Shown here one piece after another: positions 43,401 to 54,900 of a stretch of DNA of 64,000 nucleotides. The stretch is from Diadema antillarum (lineage: Eukaryota): positions 4,278,001-4,342,000 of the forward strand of contig NW_027271001.1 of the NCBI RefSeq assembly GCF_040938485.1. The letters run 5' to 3'. A model generated the notes under the pieces. That model made no database searches. It was not told where the DNA came from and saw only the letters and a program-made list of their open reading frames with translations. The position numbers were made by a program, and so were the translations under genes. The number at the start of each line of letters is the position of its first letter. Within the stretch, counting starts at the first letter, position 1.

Positions 43401-46400
43401 TTCACGACAGAGAGTAACTGTGTAAGTAAAATCCCTGTAGGCCCTAGCTACACTTTCTGCAAAACAAAACAAAACAGAAATGAATCCCGGCATTCTTTCT
43501 CTAAAAACTCTAAAAGCAAACATCTATTTGAACTGAAATAGTACAGTGACAGATGATTGGCGAAAAAGAACTCAGAACTGAGTCCTTTGGTGTAATCTGA
43601 TTGGTTTTGTAGAAGTTGCAAAATTTTGAATCATGGTGATAGATCTATCTAGGGTGACTTCAACAGGCTTTACTGTATTTCAGATCAGCTACATGACTGA
43701 TTCACTACTCGTGAAGAAGTCCTTCTATTTGCAAAATGAAATATATTTGATTGAACATAGAAGTAAAAAAAAATATATGTATACAGTGGATATTTGCCAG
43801 ATATTAATACAATGTAGGTATAACACTAAATTGCACTTTTTTTATGGCAAAGAATTTCTTTATTTTGCAAAATGATCATTTGTATATTTGTGTTTGGATA
43901 CACTACACAGATCTATAACAATTCAGTGAACATTTTAATGTGCTCTCAGATTGGCATGTTAGGTGATGGAATGTTTTTAAACAAAGAAACACTTAATATT
44001 AAACTGAGATTCACTCAACATTTCAAGGACAAGGCTTGCCATAGTACTGGCTCCATTAGAGTAGGGCCACTGATTTTTTGTTGTTGTTGTTTCATGTTTC
44101 ATCTACATTTTTATGTGCATTTCTTTTTCCTTTTTTTTTTTTGCTGGCAAATAAGGAAACTGTTCTTTTTGCAAACGAAAGTGTTTTGATTGAATGGTAT
44201 ATGTAAGTCTTTGAGATATGGTGGGTGCACAGTGAACAAAGCGTCTTTTGTGCATTGGTAGTTGTTCTCTCTCACTTTTTTTGTATAGTTTTTTTTTTTT
44301 TTTTAGTTTTTGCTAATCTGTGAAGTGTGTAAAATAGTGCAGACAATGTACAATTGCACACACTTGAACTTCAGTCTGTACCAGGAGTCTCTAGAAGTTC
44401 TAAACAGAAGGTGTACATTGTATATGTGACTGTGTATCACAAAACTGACATAAAGTTGCACACCCTGATTTTACGTGAGGATTCAGAATAGGCGAAGCAC
44501 ATCAATCTAGTCAATCTTGAGTTTTTTGCACTTTGTGAAAGAGTAACCTTCTGCATAATTCTACAGCTTTGGATCATAAAACAAGTTAAAATTGAGTATT
44601 AAGCAGTATTTTCTAGAACACATTTTGCTTGTAGAACAGAGTGGTTAAGCATATCATAGAGGCCCCTTTTAAAGGGGAAGGCTAGTAACTGATCAGTGGG
44701 AATCAGTGGAAATGCTGGGAGATGATTGTTCCAATCCTTATGGGATTCATTCAAGAGTTCATTGTATATCTATTGTTGTGTGAAAATGATGTGCTTCAGA
44801 ACGGTCTCATATTCAAGTAATGTGCAGTTTAATGCTTCCAGGTTAGCGTCCCTGGTCAGTGACGGAGCATTAATCTGCACATTACTTGAATATGAGACCG
44901 TTCTGAAGCAAATCATTTTCACACAATAATAGATAAAACAATGAACTCTTGAATGAATCCCACAAGGATTGGAACAATCATCTCCCAGCATTTCCACTGA
45001 TTCCCACTGATCAGTTACTAGCCTTCCCCTTTAATTCCTTAATAATCCTTAACACTCTTCATGTTCAACTCTAAGTATCTTTTGACAGGATGATGGTAAG
45101 CTTTTAAAGTGGGTACTAGTCATGAATAGAATGTGTTAATAGAGCATGCCTAATTTCAGCTTAATCTGATAATTCGTCATTGTTGTTGATATGGTGTTTT
45201 ACATCCTGTTATTTGTCTCATTCATTGCACAGCTAGCATGGCTTGGTAGGATTAAGTGCTTGAATAGACACTATACTTCAAAGCCTCTTTTCTCAGGACA
45301 CACTTTTTCAGAGGATGGCTTTCTTTTCAATATTTAGATAGGTTAGGAGAGTCCATTTGAATTGAGTTATACATCATTTTATTGCTGAAAGTCTGTTTTT
45401 TCATAATCTGCCCTTAACCAAAAATCCATGTGTGGCGACTTCTTTTTTGGTTTTGTGAAGCAGGGTCACACATTATGTACTTGCATAGACTAACACACCA
45501 AGTCAAAACCTTCCATGTAAAGTAGGCTTGGCCCTTTGACTTGCGCTGATGACCACTTGTGCAGCTCAAATATCAGATCTGCTTGTCAGTCAAATATCAG
45601 ACATGTTTGACAAGTGTTTTGTTTATGTACTAGGTAATATTTCAGCTAGCTCATCAAGCAAACTTTCATCCACCTTCAGTTTCTTTTTACAGTGAAGTTT
45701 CATATGATGTTTTGTTTCTCAAGGATTTTTTTTTTCCCCTTTGACCTCTTTTCCTTTTCTACACCAATTCATACCCAGTGCATCAGAAGTAGTAGTTCTA
45801 TAAACAGTGAACATTGATTCAGTTTTGTGAATCACTAGAGTTGTACTGTAGCCTTTGTATGTGAATATACTACATGTAGATAAATGAAATGTTGAAAGAT
45901 GATGCTCAGGGTAGATTGTATTTATTAGGTGATACGCTATTGTGATTGTCAAAATCTCTCTTTATTTTTTTTTATTCTTCTTTCTTTCTGGACAATTTTG
46001 TGTCGTCAATATCTCAAGAATGACATTACAAAATAACATGACATTTTCAGTCAACATGTCTCATGACAAAATCTAGCCACAATAGGGTTTTCATGACAGT
46101 AACATATCTATGACGTCATCTAGGCGCCATTTTGTGATTTTCGGACCTTGTCAAATGATCGATCATAACTTCATAACTAGATATCATTTCTGTATCATTT
46201 TCGGTGGACGTGAAGTTCAGGTCACGCTCTATCTTACTTTTTAACGCTAGTTACACAGGTCATCATTACGCGCGCGTAAGAGCGCGTCAAAATTTTAAAA
46301 GGCTCAAAACGACTTCCCAATGGGAAATCTCGAAGTTTCAGACAATTTTAAGCGTTTCGAACATTTTCTCGCGTGCGCGTCCGTCCGCGCAATTTCGCGC

Positions 46401-49400
46401 GCAGAGCCCGTAAGCAACATGAAAATGCAATTTTTTTGACTGATTTGGATTCCTGATACTTTGAGTAACAATATCCATTGATTTCCGATCGATTTCGACC
46501 TATAACAAAGGAATGCACTGGCGTCAAAGTTGAAATTCCGCGTGCGCGTCTTTCTGCAAATATAGTGAAAAAACATGTCTTTGTTTATTTCGCCATAGCT
46601 CTTTAAATCGTCCGTTGACTCTATATTTCTATTGCATATTACAAAAGTATATGAATTGTAAATAACATTCCAAGTATCAATATTGCCAGGAAAACGCGAT
46701 GACGTCATCATATCGTCATTTTAAATAAAAAAAGTGGAATTGATTTTTTTGAGGTACTGTTTCTGACATTCATTTGCTCGTATCTCTGTTGTTTAAGCTC
46801 AATATTACCCCAAATTCAGGTATGTTGCACTTTGAACATTTGCCTTTCAAGTCCATGTGATGGTTTTGAAATATGATGACGTCATCATACTAGAAATTGT
46901 GATTAAAGGTAAAGACTCAAAATCAGACAAGTTTACGTGTTATGTCTATGGGAGGTGATTTTTTTTAAACCATGCATTGACTTGACAACGTTTAAGCACC
47001 TTTATCTCAGCTGATTTTGCTTCATTTCCTCTGAAACATAAATATGTTGTAGCTGAGACAATAAGCTTTAGTAATCATGCATTTTATGTTTTCAAATCTC
47101 CTCATCAGGTTGACAATTTTGCAATTTAAAACTGAAAATGAGAATGCAATCTGTACGGAACAATTCCCAATTTTTCTTTGCAACTGTATATTGATCGAAT
47201 CCACGCTGCCACTTGTGGGAAGTTAAATAGCGCCATCACAAGTCAACACTGTCACGATAGTATTTAGATTTAAGTTTCGCATTCGATCTTCAGGACAGCC
47301 ATGTGCATAGCTGCCAAGTATTACGAAAAATTCGTAAATATTACAAATTTTTACCTATTTTACGAAAATACGAATGCACCTTTAAATTTTACGAATATGA
47401 GCGCCATTATACATGTATTATACTATGCCCATTCACGCATGTGTTATACAACATGTCAGCGCAATTCTATCCACGTACGTACGTGCACATGCATGGCGTG
47501 GACCATTACTGTAACTGTGCGAAGAGACGATAGATTGCTGTGTACTGTATGTAGCATGCAGTGTGCACCGCGCGCACCGATGCTACATTCCCCCGTGACT
47601 ACGGTACAGTCACAGCTGTACTACGTATTTGAGTGCTTGTACTCGCAGTCGAGCCGCTCGCTACGTCGCTTGTCGTACGCTGGCATAGCAAGCTATGTAG
47701 CAGAGGCTTTGGATGAAAGCAGTGAATGTGTACTACAGTAAAGTAACCTGCTGCGGAGCGCGAATTTAAGAACCTGCGAATACTGTTTACGTGGTTTCTT
47801 TCGCGGTGGTTTTAGCCGCTCAGCGCGAAAAATTAATCGCGCGAAAATATTGACGTTTACAGTATACCACGCTAGTACGTGTAGACGAAAACAGCGCATT
47901 CGTGTGAAAGTAAGAGGCCATTCATAGTACATGCATGTTGATGTTAGTGCATACACACTGCCTATGTATAGCTTTATGATGATTGCAAGTGCGCTGCACC
48001 GATGTGTATTGTGTGTGATGCAGTACAGTTGCGATGTTGCTAGCGAACGTTCGACGCTATCTTCTCACTTCTTCTTTTCTAGTTTTGACTTTTGGACAAT
48101 AAATGACAGAGAATGGATCGTAAAAAGGGACAGTGTTACAATAGCAAATACGAAACAGAGTTCGACTTCATCACAAAATCTGGAAAGAGCAAACAGCATG
48201 CATTTTGTAAGATATGTCGCCGGGATATTTCAATCGCTCATGGCGGCCGCAGTGACATCATTTTGCATAGGAAATCAAAACTTCACATTGGTAATTTTGA
48301 GTCTGAATCTTCATCCACACCCAAGATAACATCATGGATGTCAACTTCGCAGGATTTAAATGTTACGCGAGCTGAGTGCTTGTTTACATCATTCTACTTG
48401 GAGCACAACATTCCTCTTTCTGCTGCTAGTCATATGGGGCCATTGTTACGGAAAGCCTTTCCAAATTCGGAGGAGGTGAAGAAATTTTCAAGTGCAAGGA
48501 CCAAAACTTCCTGTCTAGTTAAAGAAATGGCCAAAGATGAACAAGAACGGATTGCTTTAGCAATGAAAGCAGGACCCTTTGCAATTTCAACTGATGGGAG
48601 TAATACAAGCACCAGTAAATTGTACCCAATAGTTATCAACTACTTTGACGGTAAGCAAATTTCTTGTTCTATTTTCTCCCTTCAAAACTTGGAAGAAGCG
48701 GGAACTGGCGAAAACATTGCGCAGCTGCTTATAGCAGAAATGCAAAAGCATAGTATCCCATGGCAAAACTGTACAGCATTGGGGTCAGACAATGCAGCGG
48801 TCATGACAGGTGTGAAGAAAGGAGTGGGAGCATGCCTCAAAAAATGTCAGCCAGAGCTCATTGTGCTTGGTTGCCCAAATCATCTCATTGATCTTGCCGC
48901 CAAAGCTGGATCATCAGCGTTACCATGCTCAATAGACTCGCTTCTCATTGATGTGTTCTATTATCTTGAAGCCAGCGTAAACAGGAAACTTAATCTCAGA
49001 AATTTCCAAAAGCTCCTTGGTACTGAAGTGCAAGCAATCTTGAAACATGCTTGTACTCGCTGGCTGAGCTTGGGACAGTGTTTGCCACGATTTCTCCAGC
49101 AGTGGGAAGCTCTCATTCTCTTTTTTGAGGAGGAAGTGGCTCAGCAGCAGAAGCCTGTTAAAGAGACCAAGACAACACCCAGTATCAAGACCAACCTTGT
49201 ACCGAAGAAAGCAAATCCAACTTTGAAAAGCAAACCTGCTCAGGAACCTGCGTGTGTCTCCCAGCAGAAGAAGCTTGCTCCACAAACCAGCAAGGCCAAG
49301 ATCACAGCAAGCCTCCAGAAGTTTCGTATTCCAAAGAAGGTATCTGCAATTCATGCAAAACCAGATGTAACTGTAAGCAAACCTCAACTGCTTCAGCCGG

Positions 49401-51914
49401 AGGTGAGTGCATCATCATCACAGCCTCAACGAGTAAATGTGTCTCCAGCAAGTGATTCAGTTGGACAGAAACGGCATGGTGATAATGTAAACGTACATGT
49501 ACCTCACCAAAAGAAACAAAAGACTTGTACAGAAGGACCTTCTGCTAAGGCAGTATGCACATTGAAGCTGAAGCCTGGAACTTCAAGTCATCCTAGCAAA
49601 TGTACTACAGGAGTGACCAGAAAATCTACTGCAAAGAAAACAAGCTCACACATACTCACACCTGAGACTTCAACTAAACTTAGTCAAGGTACCAGCAATG
49701 TAACTGAAAAGGAAGAAACAAGACCTGTGAGAATTCTGAAGACACTGAAATCAAAGCTGAAGTTGGCCATTGCACAATTTCTGAGCCAAAGTATTACTTC
49801 ATTTGACAGGAAAAGTGTCATCCTCCAGACCAGAAGTCCTCTTATCCACAGACTTAAAAGAGAACTTGAAAACCTACTGCGTGATCTGTACAGCAAATTT
49901 GTCACTCCACAAGCCATTATGGCAGTCACTGATGTGACCCTTCTTGATTACAAAAAGAAGGAGAATCTTAGAGAAGAAAGTGAGATTGTCATAGGAAGTG
50001 AAGCAAGAGAGACTGTGAGCACATTGGACAAGGCTGATCGCCAACAGTTTTATGCAGCAGTATACTCTTATTACTCAAAGGCATGTGACTACATTGTTGC
50101 AAAATTTCCACTGAAATCCAATGTCATCATCCATGCACAGGTTGCAGATATTTCATGTAGAATGGATGTCAAATTCACCTCTGTGAAGTTTTTCATTGAC
50201 AAGTTTCCGTGCATGTTACTCGTCAAAGAAGGAGAAGACAGACATAGTGCGATGGATGCACTGGAAAACCAGTTTGTGAGCTATCAAATTGCTCAGATTC
50301 CAGACTCAGTGCTAAGAGAGGAAGGAGCTGACAAGCAGTGGGCAGTTATGATGACACAGAAGGGTGCATCAGGTGAACTGAGCTATGATAGACTTGGAAG
50401 AGTAATGCTAGGGATCCTGACAATACCACATACAAACGCGGAGTGTGAACGGGTGTTCAGCCAAGTACGCAAGAACAAAACTGATTTCAGAGGATCAATG
50501 AGTGATGAAACTCTGTCAAGTTTACTAATCACCAAGGCTCAGCAGACAGGACCTTGCTACTTGAGAGACTTTGATGACAAATTTCTCAGGAGAGCTAAGT
50601 CGGCTACATGTAGAGCTCTCAATGAATAACAATCTATGTGTCATGAGGAAAGAAACTGATTTCAGACAGTCAACAAATGTTTGAACAATGCTACTGAAAT
50701 AAACTCAACTTTACTTTTCCTCCAGTGAGAGCAGACAGGACCATTATACCTCAACAAATTAAGAACTTAAAGCATCAGCTACATAGAGCTCTTAACACCT
50801 GTGCCTGTGGTAAGTTTTTTCTTTTTTCTTAAGGGCAGTAAAAATTCAAATGCATACTTTAATTAATGATATTTTGAATGGTCCATTTAATCATATTTTA
50901 TTGTGTTATTCATTTATCTTCAGATTTATGAATATTTTGGGCAATAATTTTCTCAAACCTAAGATTCACCCTAAAAACAACTGAAAACCCCTGTAGATAA
51001 TAGACTGGAGATCACATCTTTTAACAAATGGCAGATCTCAACTCTGTGTGATTTATATGTTAATTGTTATGTATGTGAAGAAATAGCTTTGCATTGATGT
51101 AATCCAGGAATGGGGAGAAAGGTTAAAATGCTCCAAAAAAAGGCTCAGATTGCACCAGAGAGTGTCTAGAACCCCAGAGCTTCCAGGGCTCTTAAGTGGG
51201 CCCTGGACCCCGGCCGCAAGGACTTCGCGCTTCGCGCTCGTGATGTGCGCTTCGCGCACATTTCTGTGTTTTTTATCTGATCATTACTAATTTTGAATTT
51301 CAAATGTTGGCAGCTATGCATGTGGCATAATCGGTTAGCGCGCTGGTTGTTCATAACGCCATACCGGAAGGCGAGAGGTTCGACTCCCGCAGGACTTTTA
51401 TCCGTTCTTTCTTTTTTTCTCTTTTTTTTTCGGCAATTCAGCTTTACTCCGATGTCATTTATCGTATTATTTTATCAAGTGTACGTAACCCGTGAACACT
51501 GCTGCTCTATTTCCCTTGTTTTGTATTGGAGTTTGGAGATTGGGTTTGCTTCATTAATTTTGTCACACTTAATGTTGTAAATTGCCCCTTGTTACAGTGT
51601 CCTGCTTGCCACCTTTCGTTTGCTCTTTCCTTTTCTCTTCATTGGTTATTGTTATACTGTAACAGGATAGGTAGGAACATGTACGTTTAAATAACTTGCA
51701 GGAATGGGAGCTGAATTGATTAACTCTAGTCCAGGTGTATGGCGTCTCGCTCATCTCTTTGAAATTCCAGGTTGTTATTGTTTGACCCAATAACGGAGTT
51801 GTAGACAGGTTATATGTTGCTATAGAGGTATCTTGTGCCACATGAGTGGAAAGCATCACTGTTTAGTAGTAGTAATGAACTTTTTCATGTTGTATATGGT
51901 ATAAAATATTTAAG

Positions 51915-51960
<46 letters not shown>

Positions 51961-54900
51961 ATTAAAGATAAATTTCACATCCAATTTTCGGTACAGCCGT
52001 GTGGCTTTATAGTCACTTAGCGCGCTGCATGGTCATTATGCACTACCTTAGGACGAGATGTTCGAGACCCGCAGGACGCTATCATTTTTTCTCTCTCTCT
52101 TTCTTTGTGTTTCTTTTGGCAGTTCAGCTTTATTCCGATCGATGTCATTTATCGTATTATCTTATCAATTATACTACCCCACGACACACAGTCGCTCAAG
52201 TTCCTTTTTTTTTTTGTCGGAGGCTGGAGGTTGGATTTGCTTCATTTATCATACGTATTGTTTAAATTGCCCTTGGTACAGTGCCCCACTTGCCACCTTT
52301 CCTTTTCCCTTTCCTTTTCTCTACGTTTGTTCCTGTTACATTGTCACAAGACAGGTCGGAAAATAATTTGCATAACTCAACTGGAGCAGGAATGGCAACT
52401 GAATGAATTAACTCTAGGCCAGGTGTATGGCGTCTCGCTCATCTCTTTGAAATTCCAGGATGTTATTGTTTGACGCAATAACGGAGTTGTAGACAGGTTT
52501 TTTATGTTGCTATAGAGGTATCTTGTGCCACATGAGTAGAAGGCATCACTGTTTAGTAGTAGTAATGAACTTTTTCATGTCCCTCCATGTCAATTATAGT
52601 GTGGTTTTAAAGGGGTTGTGTGTCTATCTGCCAAAGAAAAGGAAAAACTTATTTTCGTCATGGCTGCTTCTCTATACGTAGCCGTAGGTAATGAGTGTTG
52701 TTGGTATCTGAGCAGTGAAGAAACAGAGCATCAGGCTAAAATCCCCCTTAGTTTATACGCGCTAAGCGTTCAATTTGATATATCTTTCTTTATGAAGTCA
52801 ATCCCTGCTAATGGAGTTACAGAATTATGTTTATGACACGTTTTCACTGAAAGTTTGTAAAGCAAAGTTTATGGACAAGGCAAGCAATTGTACATGAATA
52901 ATACCTGCCATTGATTTCAGAGGGAAATTATGGTATGCATAAATGTAAGGGTATCATTGCTTTGGAATTGCTGAGACAATATGCTTGGCACGAGGGCTTC
53001 CACTTCTAATAACTGATCCCTTTGAAGATGTGTCGGTCACGGGTGATCGTCATGATTCATCTTTCACGTAGAAGCTTACGTTCCACACTCTTGGTTCGAG
53101 AAGACTTACCATCATACTTCAAATTGTTATTAAAGGTAAAGACTCAAAATCAGACAAGTTTACGTGTTATCTCTATGGGAGGTGATTTTTTTTTTTTTTA
53201 ATGTGCATTGACTTGACAAACGTTTAAGCACCTTTATCTCAGATGATTTTGCTCCATTTCCTCTGTAACTTAAGTGTGTGGTAACTGAGACAATAAGCTG
53301 CAGTAATCATGCATGTTATTCTTTTGAAATCTCCTCATTAGTTTGACAATTTTGCAGTTTAAAAACTGAAAAATGAGAATGGAATGTGGACAAAACGATT
53401 CCTGATTCATCTTTCACATACATAACTTTACGTTCCTCTTTTTTTCTCGTCGAGACGTATGGCCGAGTGGTTTAAAGGCGACGTCTCAGAGACGTGAGGT
53501 TGCACACGTGCGGGTTTCGAACCCCACAAGATCACGAAACAAAATACTTAGCTATTTTTACTTTTTTTTTCTTCAATTTTTGTATTACATATTCGTCCAT
53601 GTAGAAATCACATTCATATATAAATGCACCTATACACACACACAGACACACACACACACCATATCCCTCTTTTTTTGTGTTGGAGACCATATTGCTTCGA
53701 CTGCTGCAAAAATTTTTGCAGGCTGACTTTGTCAAACTGATCATAGTATGTAATGACGACGACGAAGGTGTTGTACTTTGAACAATTGTCTTTCAAGACC
53801 ATGTCATTGTTTTGTACTTTGATGACGTCATCGCACTGAAAAATTGTGATTAAAGGCAAGGTATCAAAACCAGCCGATTATAGGTTTTATGTTTACGGCA
53901 CGTATTTTTCCCAAGTTGCCAGAAATGGCATAGGGACATCAGTAGTTACAAGGCCGCATTTCCGTCTAGCAATGCAATACATGTTTCACGCGGCCACGTT
54001 GGTTGAGTGGGGCATTGACTTTTCTCCCTGTAATATCTATACATTTTCTTTTTTGCCTTACCATTTCCGTGGATGTCCCGTGGCCGAGAGGTTAGAGAAA
54101 CGGTTTTTTGCATGCAAACTCAATTATAACTTCAAGGTGCCTATATCACATTCTTTTCTTTGTCGATCACAGATGACCGACATCTGATAACCCCAAGCGT
54201 ATCACCTAACTCGTCAGTCTGACGAGTTTTCATATCTTGTTTATTTGTTTGTTTGTTAGTTTTTTTTGTTATATTTTCAATATGACATGCTCAAGACACC
54301 ATTCAGTGCTTTGTGATTACTACTCTGTATGAAAGCATGATACTGACTTGAAGTAGATGATTAAAAGTGGTTACATAGCATTTGTATGATGCATTGTGCC
54401 TGGTTGCCACCATTTGCTGACTATTGCCAATCACTTGGGGGCAATTCACAAGGGGTTTGGCATCATTCGCCCATTTTTCTGGTGTGAATACATGGGTGAA
54501 CCTTCATCTTCACTGGGTTAGCACCTTTTCTATTTGCGACGAATGAATGAAGTGGGATCTTTTTACCTGCATGACATATGGCTAACTCACACATGGGGAC
54601 CTCCATTTGATGTCCTATCAGAGGGGACAGCATGTTTTTTTGCCTCTTACTAGGAGAGGGGGACGACATGATCTCACACAGCATTTGCTCAGCTAGACTC
54701 CATGTGATATTGAAACCCGAGCCCACTAGTTTGCATTGCGGACACATTACTGACCAAGCAACATAATATCGTGATGCAATTTTCCTGTTAAAGCAATACT
54801 TTTATTGCAATGTGAATGGAGGTTTAAAACTTTGCTGTTTTAAATGTTGCAATATTTTGCACTGAGAATGGGTTAACCTGTTTTATCATTTCTTCTTTTT

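What the first reader, a model, noticed from the sequence alone, without database searches (positions are those of the whole stretch)
47300..51324. Potentially active hAT with a non-canonical 6-bp TSD, supported by an internal empty-site control
Seen: perfect 12-bp TIRs, identical CATGTG flanks and an uninterrupted 838-aa ORF with D161/D226/E779, CxxH and RW. Removing the element and one TSD gives ACAGCCATGTGGCATAATCGGTTAGCGCG. This aligns with the uninterrupted sister repeat ACAGCCGTGTGGC..TTAGCGCG at 51993, so 6 bp rather than 8 bp were duplicated, and the target was the 5' end of a tRNA-like head just before its A box. Inference: a recent insertion and a candidate active transposase of a little-studied subgroup, of possible use as a tool.
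Basis: partly seen in the sequence, partly recalled or inferred. Interest (0 to 1): 0.7.

Follow-up and report, generated by a model that had tools for sequence, protein, structure and literature searches.

The report
Young hAT transposon making 6-bp duplications
This is an intact copy of a small, very young and probably still mobile hAT-type cut-and-paste transposon that always duplicates 6 bases of its target rather than the usual 8. That habit is real here, but a group with it (hAT6) was named in 2007.

Summary
Window 47306-51318 is a 4013-bp element with perfect 12-bp inverted ends. CATGTG flanks it on both sides, and it carries one open 838-aa frame.

- **Protein:** a genuine hAT transposase. 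It matches the Pfam dimerisation domain, a homologue profile matches Hermes colinearly, and the predicted fold matches Hermes. D161, D226, E779, C254/H257 and R316/W317 are invariant in 30 homologues.
- **Copies:** the 1.75-Gb assembly holds exactly 12 copies at 10 independent sites. Nine have the intact frame and are 99.0-99.9% identical.
- **Duplication:** nine sites show a perfect 6-bp repeat and one shows 5 of 6. None shows 8.
- **Empty sites:** ten copies of the host repeat elsewhere carry the window's target uninterrupted. Four other insertions have a partner contig with contiguous flanks and a single 6-mer. The family is therefore polymorphic and recently active.
- **Selection:** substitutions among copies give dN/dS of about 0.25.

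hAT families with 6-bp duplications are a named group, hAT6 (Kapitonov and Jurka 2007, cited in PMC12730594). The target is not the 5' end of a tRNA-derived SINE. It lies inside a ~4.3-kb Helentron-like repeat, and tRNA models do not recognise it. The window copy is the second most diverged of the eight independent intact copies. Verdict: new member of a known kind, moderate interest.

The parts
47300..47305 (+). Left copy of the 6-bp target site duplication, CATGTG
   Evidence: Ten paralogous empty sites carry a single CATGTG.
47306..47317 (+). Left terminal inverted repeat, CATAGCTGCCAA
   Evidence: It is identical in all 12 genomic copies and in the Patiria miniata relative.
47321..47395 (.). 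Cluster of four TTACGAA subterminal repeats, candidate transposase binding sites (inferred)
   Evidence: Four of the six matches in the 64-kb window fall in these 75 bases. The same motif lies in the left end of the Patiria element.
47509..47862 (.). Nested 354-bp TA-flanked MITE with termini CTGTAA..TTACAG, sitting in the 5' non-coding part of the element
   Evidence: It is absent from copy L011, whose sequence reads straight across the site with a single TA. Copies L010 and L012 carry 187 bp more of it. The first look found 2412 candidate matches to the whole element, and the scored non-hAT matches all cover this stretch at 86-91% identity.
48113..50629 (+). Intronless transposase gene, 838 aa plus stop
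48206..48286 (+). N-terminal CxxC...H.....H zinc finger (C32, C35, H52, H58), BED-like
   Evidence: These columns are conserved in at least 90% of the 30 homologues. The region is modelled as small strands plus a helix with pLDDT around 90.
48593..48595 (+). Catalytic D161
   Evidence: Invariant. It aligns with the first Hermes catalytic Asp segment.
48788..48790 (+). Catalytic D226
   Evidence: Invariant. It aligns with the Hermes 'VTD' segment.
48872..48883 (+). CxxH motif (C254..H257)
   Evidence: Both residues are invariant.
49058..49063 (+). RW motif (R316, W317)
   Evidence: Invariant. It aligns with the Hermes TRW motif.
49166..49705 (+). Roughly 180-aa disordered insert rich in K, S, T and P (residues 352-531) inside the helical insertion domain
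   Evidence: pLDDT is below 50 with no secondary structure. The columns are poorly conserved, but the frame stays open in nine loci.
50381..50536 (+). hAT C-terminal dimerisation region (residues 757-808), containing catalytic E779 at 50447-50449
   Evidence: Pfam PF05699, E 8e-7. The profile matches Hermes at E 3e-13. E779 is invariant.
51307..51318 (+). Right terminal inverted repeat, TTGGCAGCTATG
51319..51324 (+). Right copy of the target site duplication, CATGTG
45937..47299 (+). Left part of the host repeat into which the hAT inserted
   Evidence: It is 95-98% identical to other genomic copies, several of which share the boundary at 45937.
51325..54242 (+). Right part of the host repeat, including the ~80% internal sister unit at 51969-52580 and a subterminal hairpin near 54210-54228

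Best explanation
Window 47306-51318 is one intact copy of a low-copy, very young autonomous DNA transposon of the hAT superfamily. Its single intronless gene encodes an 838-aa transposase. The protein has an N-terminal BED-like zinc finger and an RNase-H-like DDE core (D161, D226, E779). A helical insertion domain carrying CxxH and RW splits that core, and the hAT dimerisation region closes the protein. By analogy with Hermes (inferred, not shown), a transposase multimer binds the 12-bp inverted ends and probably the subterminal TTACGAA repeats. It would excise the element through hairpins on the flanking DNA. It would then join the two 3' ends to target phosphates staggered by 6 bp, not 8. 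Repair of that stagger gives the 6-bp duplication. The ten known targets suggest a weak palindromic preference, CAnnTG. The family was mobile very recently in this species. The window copy is an older member that landed inside a multicopy Helentron-like repeat. By its duplication length the element fits the Repbase group hAT6. By its transposase it belongs to the FAM200/ZBED5/DUF4371 (Buster/Charlie-type) branch of hAT.
For: **Anatomy:**

**hAT identity:**
- Pfam PF05699 matches.
- Homologues carry PF27073 'FAM200-ZBED5_RNase-like' plus PF05699, and some carry DUF4371.
- A homologue profile hits Hermes at E 3e-13 with colinear D, D, RW and E segments.
- The AlphaFold model (pLDDT 79) hits Hermes structures at E 2e-9, with TM up to 0.65 on the target.
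- The nearest atlas clusters are ZMYM1/FAM200/GTF2IRD2/ZBED5-like.

**Mobility:**
- The genome holds exactly 12 left ends, at 10 independent sites.
- Nine loci have an intact 838-aa frame, at 99.0-99.9% identity.

**Six-base duplication:**
- Nine of ten sites are perfect and one matches 5 of 6.
- Ten paralogous empty sites match the window's target.
- Four partner-contig empty sites each carry a single 6-mer: L004/L051, L006/L058, L007/L060 and L008/L063.

**Selection in the family's history:** 18 synonymous against 16 non-synonymous changes give dN/dS of about 0.25. Coding divergence is 0.17% against 0.38% in non-coding parts.

**Window copy:** it keeps every invariant residue.

**Other samples:** the element occurs at about 99% identity in DNA runs labelled as two organisms, and at about 94% in a third.

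**Known group:** hAT6 is documented in PMC12730594.
Against: - No transposition, excision footprint or transcript was observed. No run on record as RNA holds the element, and the runs of organism C are only guessed to be RNA.
- The partner contigs are assumed to be alternative haplotypes. They could instead be recent segmental duplications that predate the insertions. That would still prove the 6-bp duplication but would weaken the case for polymorphism.
- The window copy differs from the family majority at 5 residues, with unknown effect.
- The single Patiria miniata relative examined has the same ends but an apparent 7-bp direct repeat. The 6-bp length may therefore not hold across the wider clade.
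- Whether the family clusters with Repbase hAT6 transposases could not be tested.
- The target preference rests on only 10 sites.
Confidence: 0.85

Rival explanations
1. It is a domesticated hAT-derived host gene of the ZBED/FAM200 type, not a mobile element.
For: The frame is intact and shows purifying selection. Its nearest named relatives include domesticated FAM200, ZBED5 and GTF2IRD2. The same genome holds domesticated hAT genes elsewhere (unchecked note).
Against: There are ten independent sites with perfect inverted ends and duplications. Four filled/empty locus pairs exist. The gene has no introns. The copies are 99-99.9% identical, non-coding ends included.
Confidence: 0.02
2. It is an ordinary 8-bp-duplicating hAT whose duplications only look like 6 bp, because the element boundaries were misplaced or the flanks mutated.
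For: CATG is palindromic, so the boundary in the window copy alone is ambiguous by one or two bases. The Patiria relative shows 7 bp.
Against: Filled minus empty is exactly 4013 + 6 bases at the window site (ten paralogous empty sites). At four other loci, whose elements are 4013-4031 bp, each partner contig shows contiguous flanks with a single 6-mer. Sites whose 6-mer does not begin with C or end with G (TACTTG, CATCCT, CATAAC) fix the boundary.
Confidence: 0.02
3. The family is real but now dead. The copies are relics of one short burst, silenced or non-functional, for example because of the 180-aa disordered insert or the MITE nested in the 5' region.
For: No RNA evidence was found. The copy number is low and no non-autonomous derivatives share the left end. 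All intact copies carry the nested MITE.
Against: Hemizygous insertions differ from the family majority at only 3-10 of 4013 sites. Nine frames are intact. The MITE-bearing lineage is the one that multiplied. The disordered insert is also present in the intact Patiria homologue, which aligns over 100% of the query.
Confidence: 0.12

Closest known systems
hAT6 group of Repbase (Kapitonov and Jurka 2007, Repbase Reports 7:1192-1204, as cited in PMC12730594)
   Same: It has a hAT-superfamily transposase and 6-bp target site duplications, which is the feature that defines the group.
   Different: No hAT6 reference sequence was available here, so phylogenetic membership is untested. PMC12730594 places hAT5 and hAT6 in a lineage with Blackjack. 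This element's transposase is of the FAM200/ZBED5/DUF4371 type instead. Whether the two placements coincide is unknown.
Buster family of hAT (TcBuster, AeBuster1 and the recently tested AnBuster; PMC12637253, PMC3499496)
   Same: Both have an intronless transposase. Homologues carry the FAM200-ZBED5 RNase-like domain and DUF4371. Both have an N-terminal zinc finger and the hAT dimerisation domain. ZBED5 is Buster-derived (from my own knowledge and the abstract of PMC3606216).
   Different: Buster elements make 8-bp duplications (consensus nnnTAnnn) and have about 16-bp inverted ends. This one makes 6-bp duplications (roughly CAnnTG) and has 12-bp ends starting CATAG. It also carries a ~180-aa disordered insert in the insertion domain.
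Hermes transposase (PDB 2bw3, 4d1q, 8edg)
   Same: The overall fold matches. So do the DDE triad, CxxH, the RW tryptophan and the C-terminal dimerisation helix.
   Different: Sequence identity is only about 12%. Hermes belongs to the Ac family, has 17-bp ends and makes 8-bp duplications (nTnnnnAn).
Patiria miniata LOC119735640 element (L043:5205-8726)
   Same: The protein is 60% identical over its full length. The terminal 12-13 bases are the same (CATAGCTGCCAA...). TTACGAA repeats lie in the left end.
   Different: The element is 3522 bp and lacks the nested MITE. The one copy examined has a 7-bp direct repeat, CTGAATA.

Membership tests
hAT superfamily | DDE catalytic triad in an RNase-H-like fold, split by a helical insertion domain | tested here: met
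   D161, D226 and E779 are invariant. They are colinear with Hermes, and the fold matches Hermes.
hAT superfamily | C-terminal hAT dimerisation domain (PF05699) | tested here: met
   E 8e-7 at 29.2 bits against a cut-off of 21.4. All 30 homologues match.
hAT superfamily | CxxH and RW motifs | tested here: met
   C254, H257, R316 and W317 are invariant.
hAT superfamily | Short terminal inverted repeats (about 10-25 bp) | tested here: met
   The ends are 12 bp and perfect. They start CATAG, whereas the common hAT start, recalled from memory, is YARNG.
hAT superfamily | 8-bp target site duplication (the usual value) | tested here: not met
   It is 6 bp at all 10 sites. Exceptions of 5, 6 and 7 bp are accepted within the superfamily (PMC12730594).
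hAT6 group (Repbase) | 6-bp target site duplication | tested here: met
hAT6 group (Repbase) | Transposase clusters with reference hAT6 transposases | not testable with these tools
   No Repbase sequences can be reached. Only literature statements are available.
Buster family of hAT | Buster-type transposase core (FAM200-ZBED5 RNase-like, DUF4371) | tested here: inconclusive
   PF27073 is precomputed on the homologues. DUF4371 was found in 4 of 30 homologues but not in this protein. The atlas neighbours are of this type. No tree with TcBuster or AeBuster was built.
Buster family of hAT | 8-bp duplication with nnnTAnnn target consensus | tested here: not met
   The duplication is 6 bp, roughly CAnnTG, with no central TA preference.
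Domesticated hAT gene (ZBED/FAM200 type) | Single orthologous locus, no inverted ends or duplications, immobile | tested here: not met
   There are 12 loci, all with ends and duplications, and four filled/empty pairs.
   ARAGORN and Rfam find no tRNA in interrupted or uninterrupted copies. Conservation continues more than 1.3 kb upstream of the 'head'.
Helentron-associated non-autonomous element (HINE, the host repeat) | Short 5' terminal and 3' subterminal inverted repeat, a 3' stem-loop, internal tandem repeats or a microsatellite, head-to-tail arrays | tested here: inconclusive
   An 11-bp inverted pair lies at 45929-45939 and 54198-54208. A hairpin lies at about 54210-54228. There are internal ~600-bp units and a (TA)n run. 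Head-to-tail junctions occur in L035 and L040. No autonomous partner or insertion-site rule was examined.

The most novel reading that the evidence does not exclude
The 6-bp stagger may have arisen inside the Buster/Charlie-type (FAM200/ZBED5) branch of hAT, independently of the Repbase hAT6 lineage. It would come with its own palindromic CAnnTG target preference. The close Patiria relative shows 7 bp. If that reflects a real difference, duplication length in this clade would be evolutionarily labile. That would offer a natural series for finding which transposase features set the spacing of the two strand-transfer sites. It would also offer a still-active echinoderm hAT for transgenesis.
Probability: 0.3. 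Interest if true: 0.5.

Novelty: new member of a known kind. Interest (0 to 1): 0.35.

Why it matters
hAT transposases such as TcBuster are in use as gene-delivery tools. Natural elements caught while still mobile are the raw material for new ones. This family is unusually clean for that purpose. It has ten sites, nine intact genes, exact empty sites and hemizygous insertions within one assembly. It also gives a well-documented animal example of a 6-bp-duplicating hAT, a group almost absent from the open literature. That makes it a useful comparison for asking what sets the 8-bp stagger in Hermes and Buster. For genome annotation, it shows that the assembly keeps alternative haplotypes that differ by transposon insertions. 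It is not a new kind of element.

Tried and rejected
- **Ends in distant homologues.** I looked for ends and duplications in the tick (L044) and pipefish (L045) loci. No convincing ends were found, only one weak 10-bp candidate in the tick. The Diadema protein is not on record.
- **Insertion polymorphism in public runs.** The 'skip 4019' joints are paralogous copies of the host repeat, about 91% alike, not alleles of this locus.
- **RNA evidence.** No run on record as RNA holds the element. Contigs from organism C are only guessed to be RNA and are about 94% alike.
- **Literature on hAT6.** Beyond PMC12730594 and one mention in PMC3942097, nothing was found. There was nothing on hAT6 in sea urchins.
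- **Non-autonomous derivatives.** None share the 22-base left end.
- **L003.** No partner contig was found, because most of its flank is a repeat. The L005 partner lacks the element but is rearranged at the site.
- **Not run.** I did not run the large representative protein search, because the family scans had already settled the protein's identity.
Full report
**1. The observation**

- CATAGCTGCCAA at 47306-47317 and TTGGCAGCTATG at 51307-51318 are perfect 12-bp inverted repeats. The match fails at base 13.
- CATGTG lies directly outside both ends, at 47300-47305 and 51319-51324.
- One frame is open from 48113 to 50629, giving 838 aa.

The element is therefore 4013 bp long.

**2. The protein**

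- Pfam recognises only the hAT C-terminal dimerisation region, at residues 757-808 with E 8e-7.
- The word search found 54 relatives. The best are an uncharacterised Patiria miniata protein and an unnamed ENA protein, both 59-60% identical over the full length. Many 716-745-aa proteins from public assemblies follow.
- The precomputed domains on these relatives are PF27073 and PF05699, and some carry DUF4371. PF27073 is named 'FAM200-ZBED5_RNase-like'.
- In an alignment of 30 relatives, D161, D226, C254, H257, R316, W317 and E779 are invariant. A CxxC...H.....H zinc finger (C32, C35, H52, H58) is nearly so.
- A profile of that alignment hits Hermes transposase at E 3e-13. Three colinear pieces cover the two aspartates, the TRW motif and the glutamate.
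- An AlphaFold model (mean pLDDT 79, pTM 0.69) has two confident blocks, residues 1-350 and 535-838. A disordered loop of about 180 residues (352-531) separates them.
- Foldseek places the model on Hermes structures at E 2e-9, with TM up to 0.65 on the target.
- The nearest language-model clusters are ZMYM1/FAM200/GTF2IRD2/ZBED5-like hAT proteins.

This is a complete hAT transposase of the Buster/Charlie-type branch.

**3. Copies in the genome**

The window is C113:4278001-4342000 of a 1.75-Gb assembly with 2963 contigs.
- A DNA search found nine full-length copies at 99-100% identity and three altered ones.
- A 22-base left-end pattern occurs exactly 12 times, at the same loci, and its control pattern occurs zero times. 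The family has no non-autonomous derivatives with that end.
- C587 duplicates the window locus with no substitutions, only small indels. C451 and C207 are two versions of another locus.
- That leaves ten independent sites. Eight of them, plus the duplicate, keep the 838-aa frame with 5-10 residue differences from the window copy.
- Pairwise identity among the intact copies is 99.0-99.9%.

**4. The 6-bp duplication**

The flanks of the ten sites read CATGTG, CATCCT, CAAGTG, CATACC, CCCTT(C/A), CATGTG, TACTTG, CACTGG, CTACTG and CATAAC. Nine are perfect 6-bp repeats and none extends to 8.

Two kinds of empty site confirm the length.
- **Paralogous sites.** The host repeat around the window copy has many copies at 96-98% identity. 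Ten of them read straight through, with a single CATGTG between the same flanks.
- **Partner contigs.** For four other insertions, the assembly holds a second contig whose flanks are 95-99.9% identical and contiguous, with one copy of the 6-mer. The pairs are C157 against C87, C1133 against C887, C50 against C1373, and C71 against C587.

The C887 empty site shows that the imperfect pair arose from target CCCTTA. The base next to the left end is changed in the filled allele.

The empty alleles are exact, not footprints, so these sites were never occupied. If the partner contigs are haplotypes, these four insertions are hemizygous. The contigs' divergence and the size of the assembly suggest that they are.

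Across the ten targets, position 1 is C in 9, position 2 is A in 8, position 5 is T in 6 and position 6 is G in 6. This gives a weak palindromic CAnnTG. With only ten sites, that is a lead and not a result.

**5. Age and selection**

I scored each intact copy against the majority state at each site.
- There are 18 synonymous, 16 non-synonymous and 46 non-coding differences.
- dN/dS is about 0.25. Coding divergence is 0.17%, against 0.38% in non-coding parts.

Some of the differences therefore arose in lineages that had to stay functional, as expected for an element copied from working masters.

The window copy carries 24 differences and is the second most diverged of the eight independent intact copies (L009 has 26). 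The four copies that have an empty partner contig (hemizygous if those partners are haplotypes) carry 3-10. None of the window copy's five private residue changes touches an invariant column. Copy L009 has R326Q at an invariant arginine.

**6. Other samples**

Contigs from DNA runs labelled as two organisms carry the element at about 99% identity. Runs of a third organism, only guessed to be RNA, carry a version about 94% alike. No run on record as RNA holds it, so expression is unknown.

**7. Surroundings**

The 'tRNA-like head' is not recognised by ARAGORN or by Rfam, even in uninterrupted copies. The resemblance is limited to box-like motifs.

Conservation among copies runs from about 45937 to at least 53470, and by two head-to-tail junctions to about 54242. 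The target therefore lies inside a ~4.3-kb repeat. That repeat has these features:
- a (TA)n run;
- an 11-bp inverted pair at 45929-45939 and 54198-54208;
- a hairpin just before its 3' end.

I did not test it further.

Inside the hAT, 47509-47862 is a TA-flanked MITE. Copy L011 lacks it and shows the empty TA site, and two old copies carry a longer version. The MITE entered an ancestor, and the lineage carrying it is the one that multiplied.

**8. Comparison with what is known**

hAT elements usually duplicate 8 bp. Families with 5 and 6 bp were named hAT5 and hAT6 by Kapitonov and Jurka in 2007, and 7-bp families were described in 2025 (PMC12730594). By its defining feature this element belongs to hAT6. 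I could not test whether its transposase clusters with the reference hAT6 proteins.

Its transposase type is that of Buster/Charlie relatives. Studied members of that branch make 8-bp duplications and have 16-bp ends (PMC12637253).

The Patiria relative lies in a 3522-bp element with the same terminal bases but an apparent 7-bp repeat. That is a single copy and remains unresolved.

**9. Verdict**

It is wrong on the nature of the target. It also overstates novelty and the youth of this particular copy. This is a new member of a known kind. It has moderate interest as a candidate active element and as a clean example of a poorly documented group.

Noticed in passing
window 47509-47862: A 354-bp TA-flanked MITE (ends CTGTAA..TTACAG) is nested in the hAT's 5' non-coding region. 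The first look found 2412 candidate matches to the whole element, and the scored non-hAT matches all cover this stretch at 86-91% identity. Copy L011 preserves the empty TA site. Copies L010 and L012 carry a version 187 bp longer.
   Followed up: partly
window 45937-47299 and 51325-54242: The host is a ~4.3-kb multicopy repeat. At least 40 copies of its unit A were scored, and those aligned over the wider repeat are 95-98% identical. It has internal ~600-bp units, a (TA)n run, an 11-bp inverted pair (45929-45939 / 54198-54208), a 3' hairpin and head-to-tail arrays. This fits a Helentron-associated non-autonomous element.
   Followed up: partly
window 50648-50749 versus 50473-50560: Just after the stop codon lies a degenerate (~72%) duplicate of the last ~90 bases of coding sequence. 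A GTAAG donor-like site follows near 50812. It may be a relic duplication or an alternative 3' exon.
   Followed up: no
window 51139-51317: The 3' subterminal part of the hAT has very high contig depth in all four runs laid, including the more distant organism C. It contains three CTTCGCGC repeats. It may share sequence with another high-copy repeat.
   Followed up: no
G000 contigs C106:36079-38568, C706:771069-773558, C227:1904303-1906792, C833:890824-893313: A sister hAT family, 37% identical at the protein level, has four intact 884-aa open frames in the same genome. Its ends and duplication length could not be examined.
   Followed up: no
G000 contig pairs C157/C87, C1133/C887, C50/C1373, C71/C587, C113/C587, C451/C207: The assembly keeps pairs of contigs for the same locus at 95-100% identity. 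These are probably uncollapsed haplotypes, and they can differ by whole transposon insertions.
   Followed up: partly
L043:5198-5204 and 8727-8733 (Patiria miniata): The 60%-identical Patiria element has the same terminal 12-13 bases but is flanked by a 7-bp direct repeat, CTGAATA, rather than 6 bp.
   Followed up: partly
window 49166-49705 (residues 352-531): A ~180-residue disordered stretch rich in K, S, T and P sits inside the helical insertion domain. It stays open in the nine loci that keep the 838-aa frame. The best-conserved homologues have a counterpart, but its sequence is hardly conserved. It may be a linker or a nuclear-localisation region.
   Followed up: no
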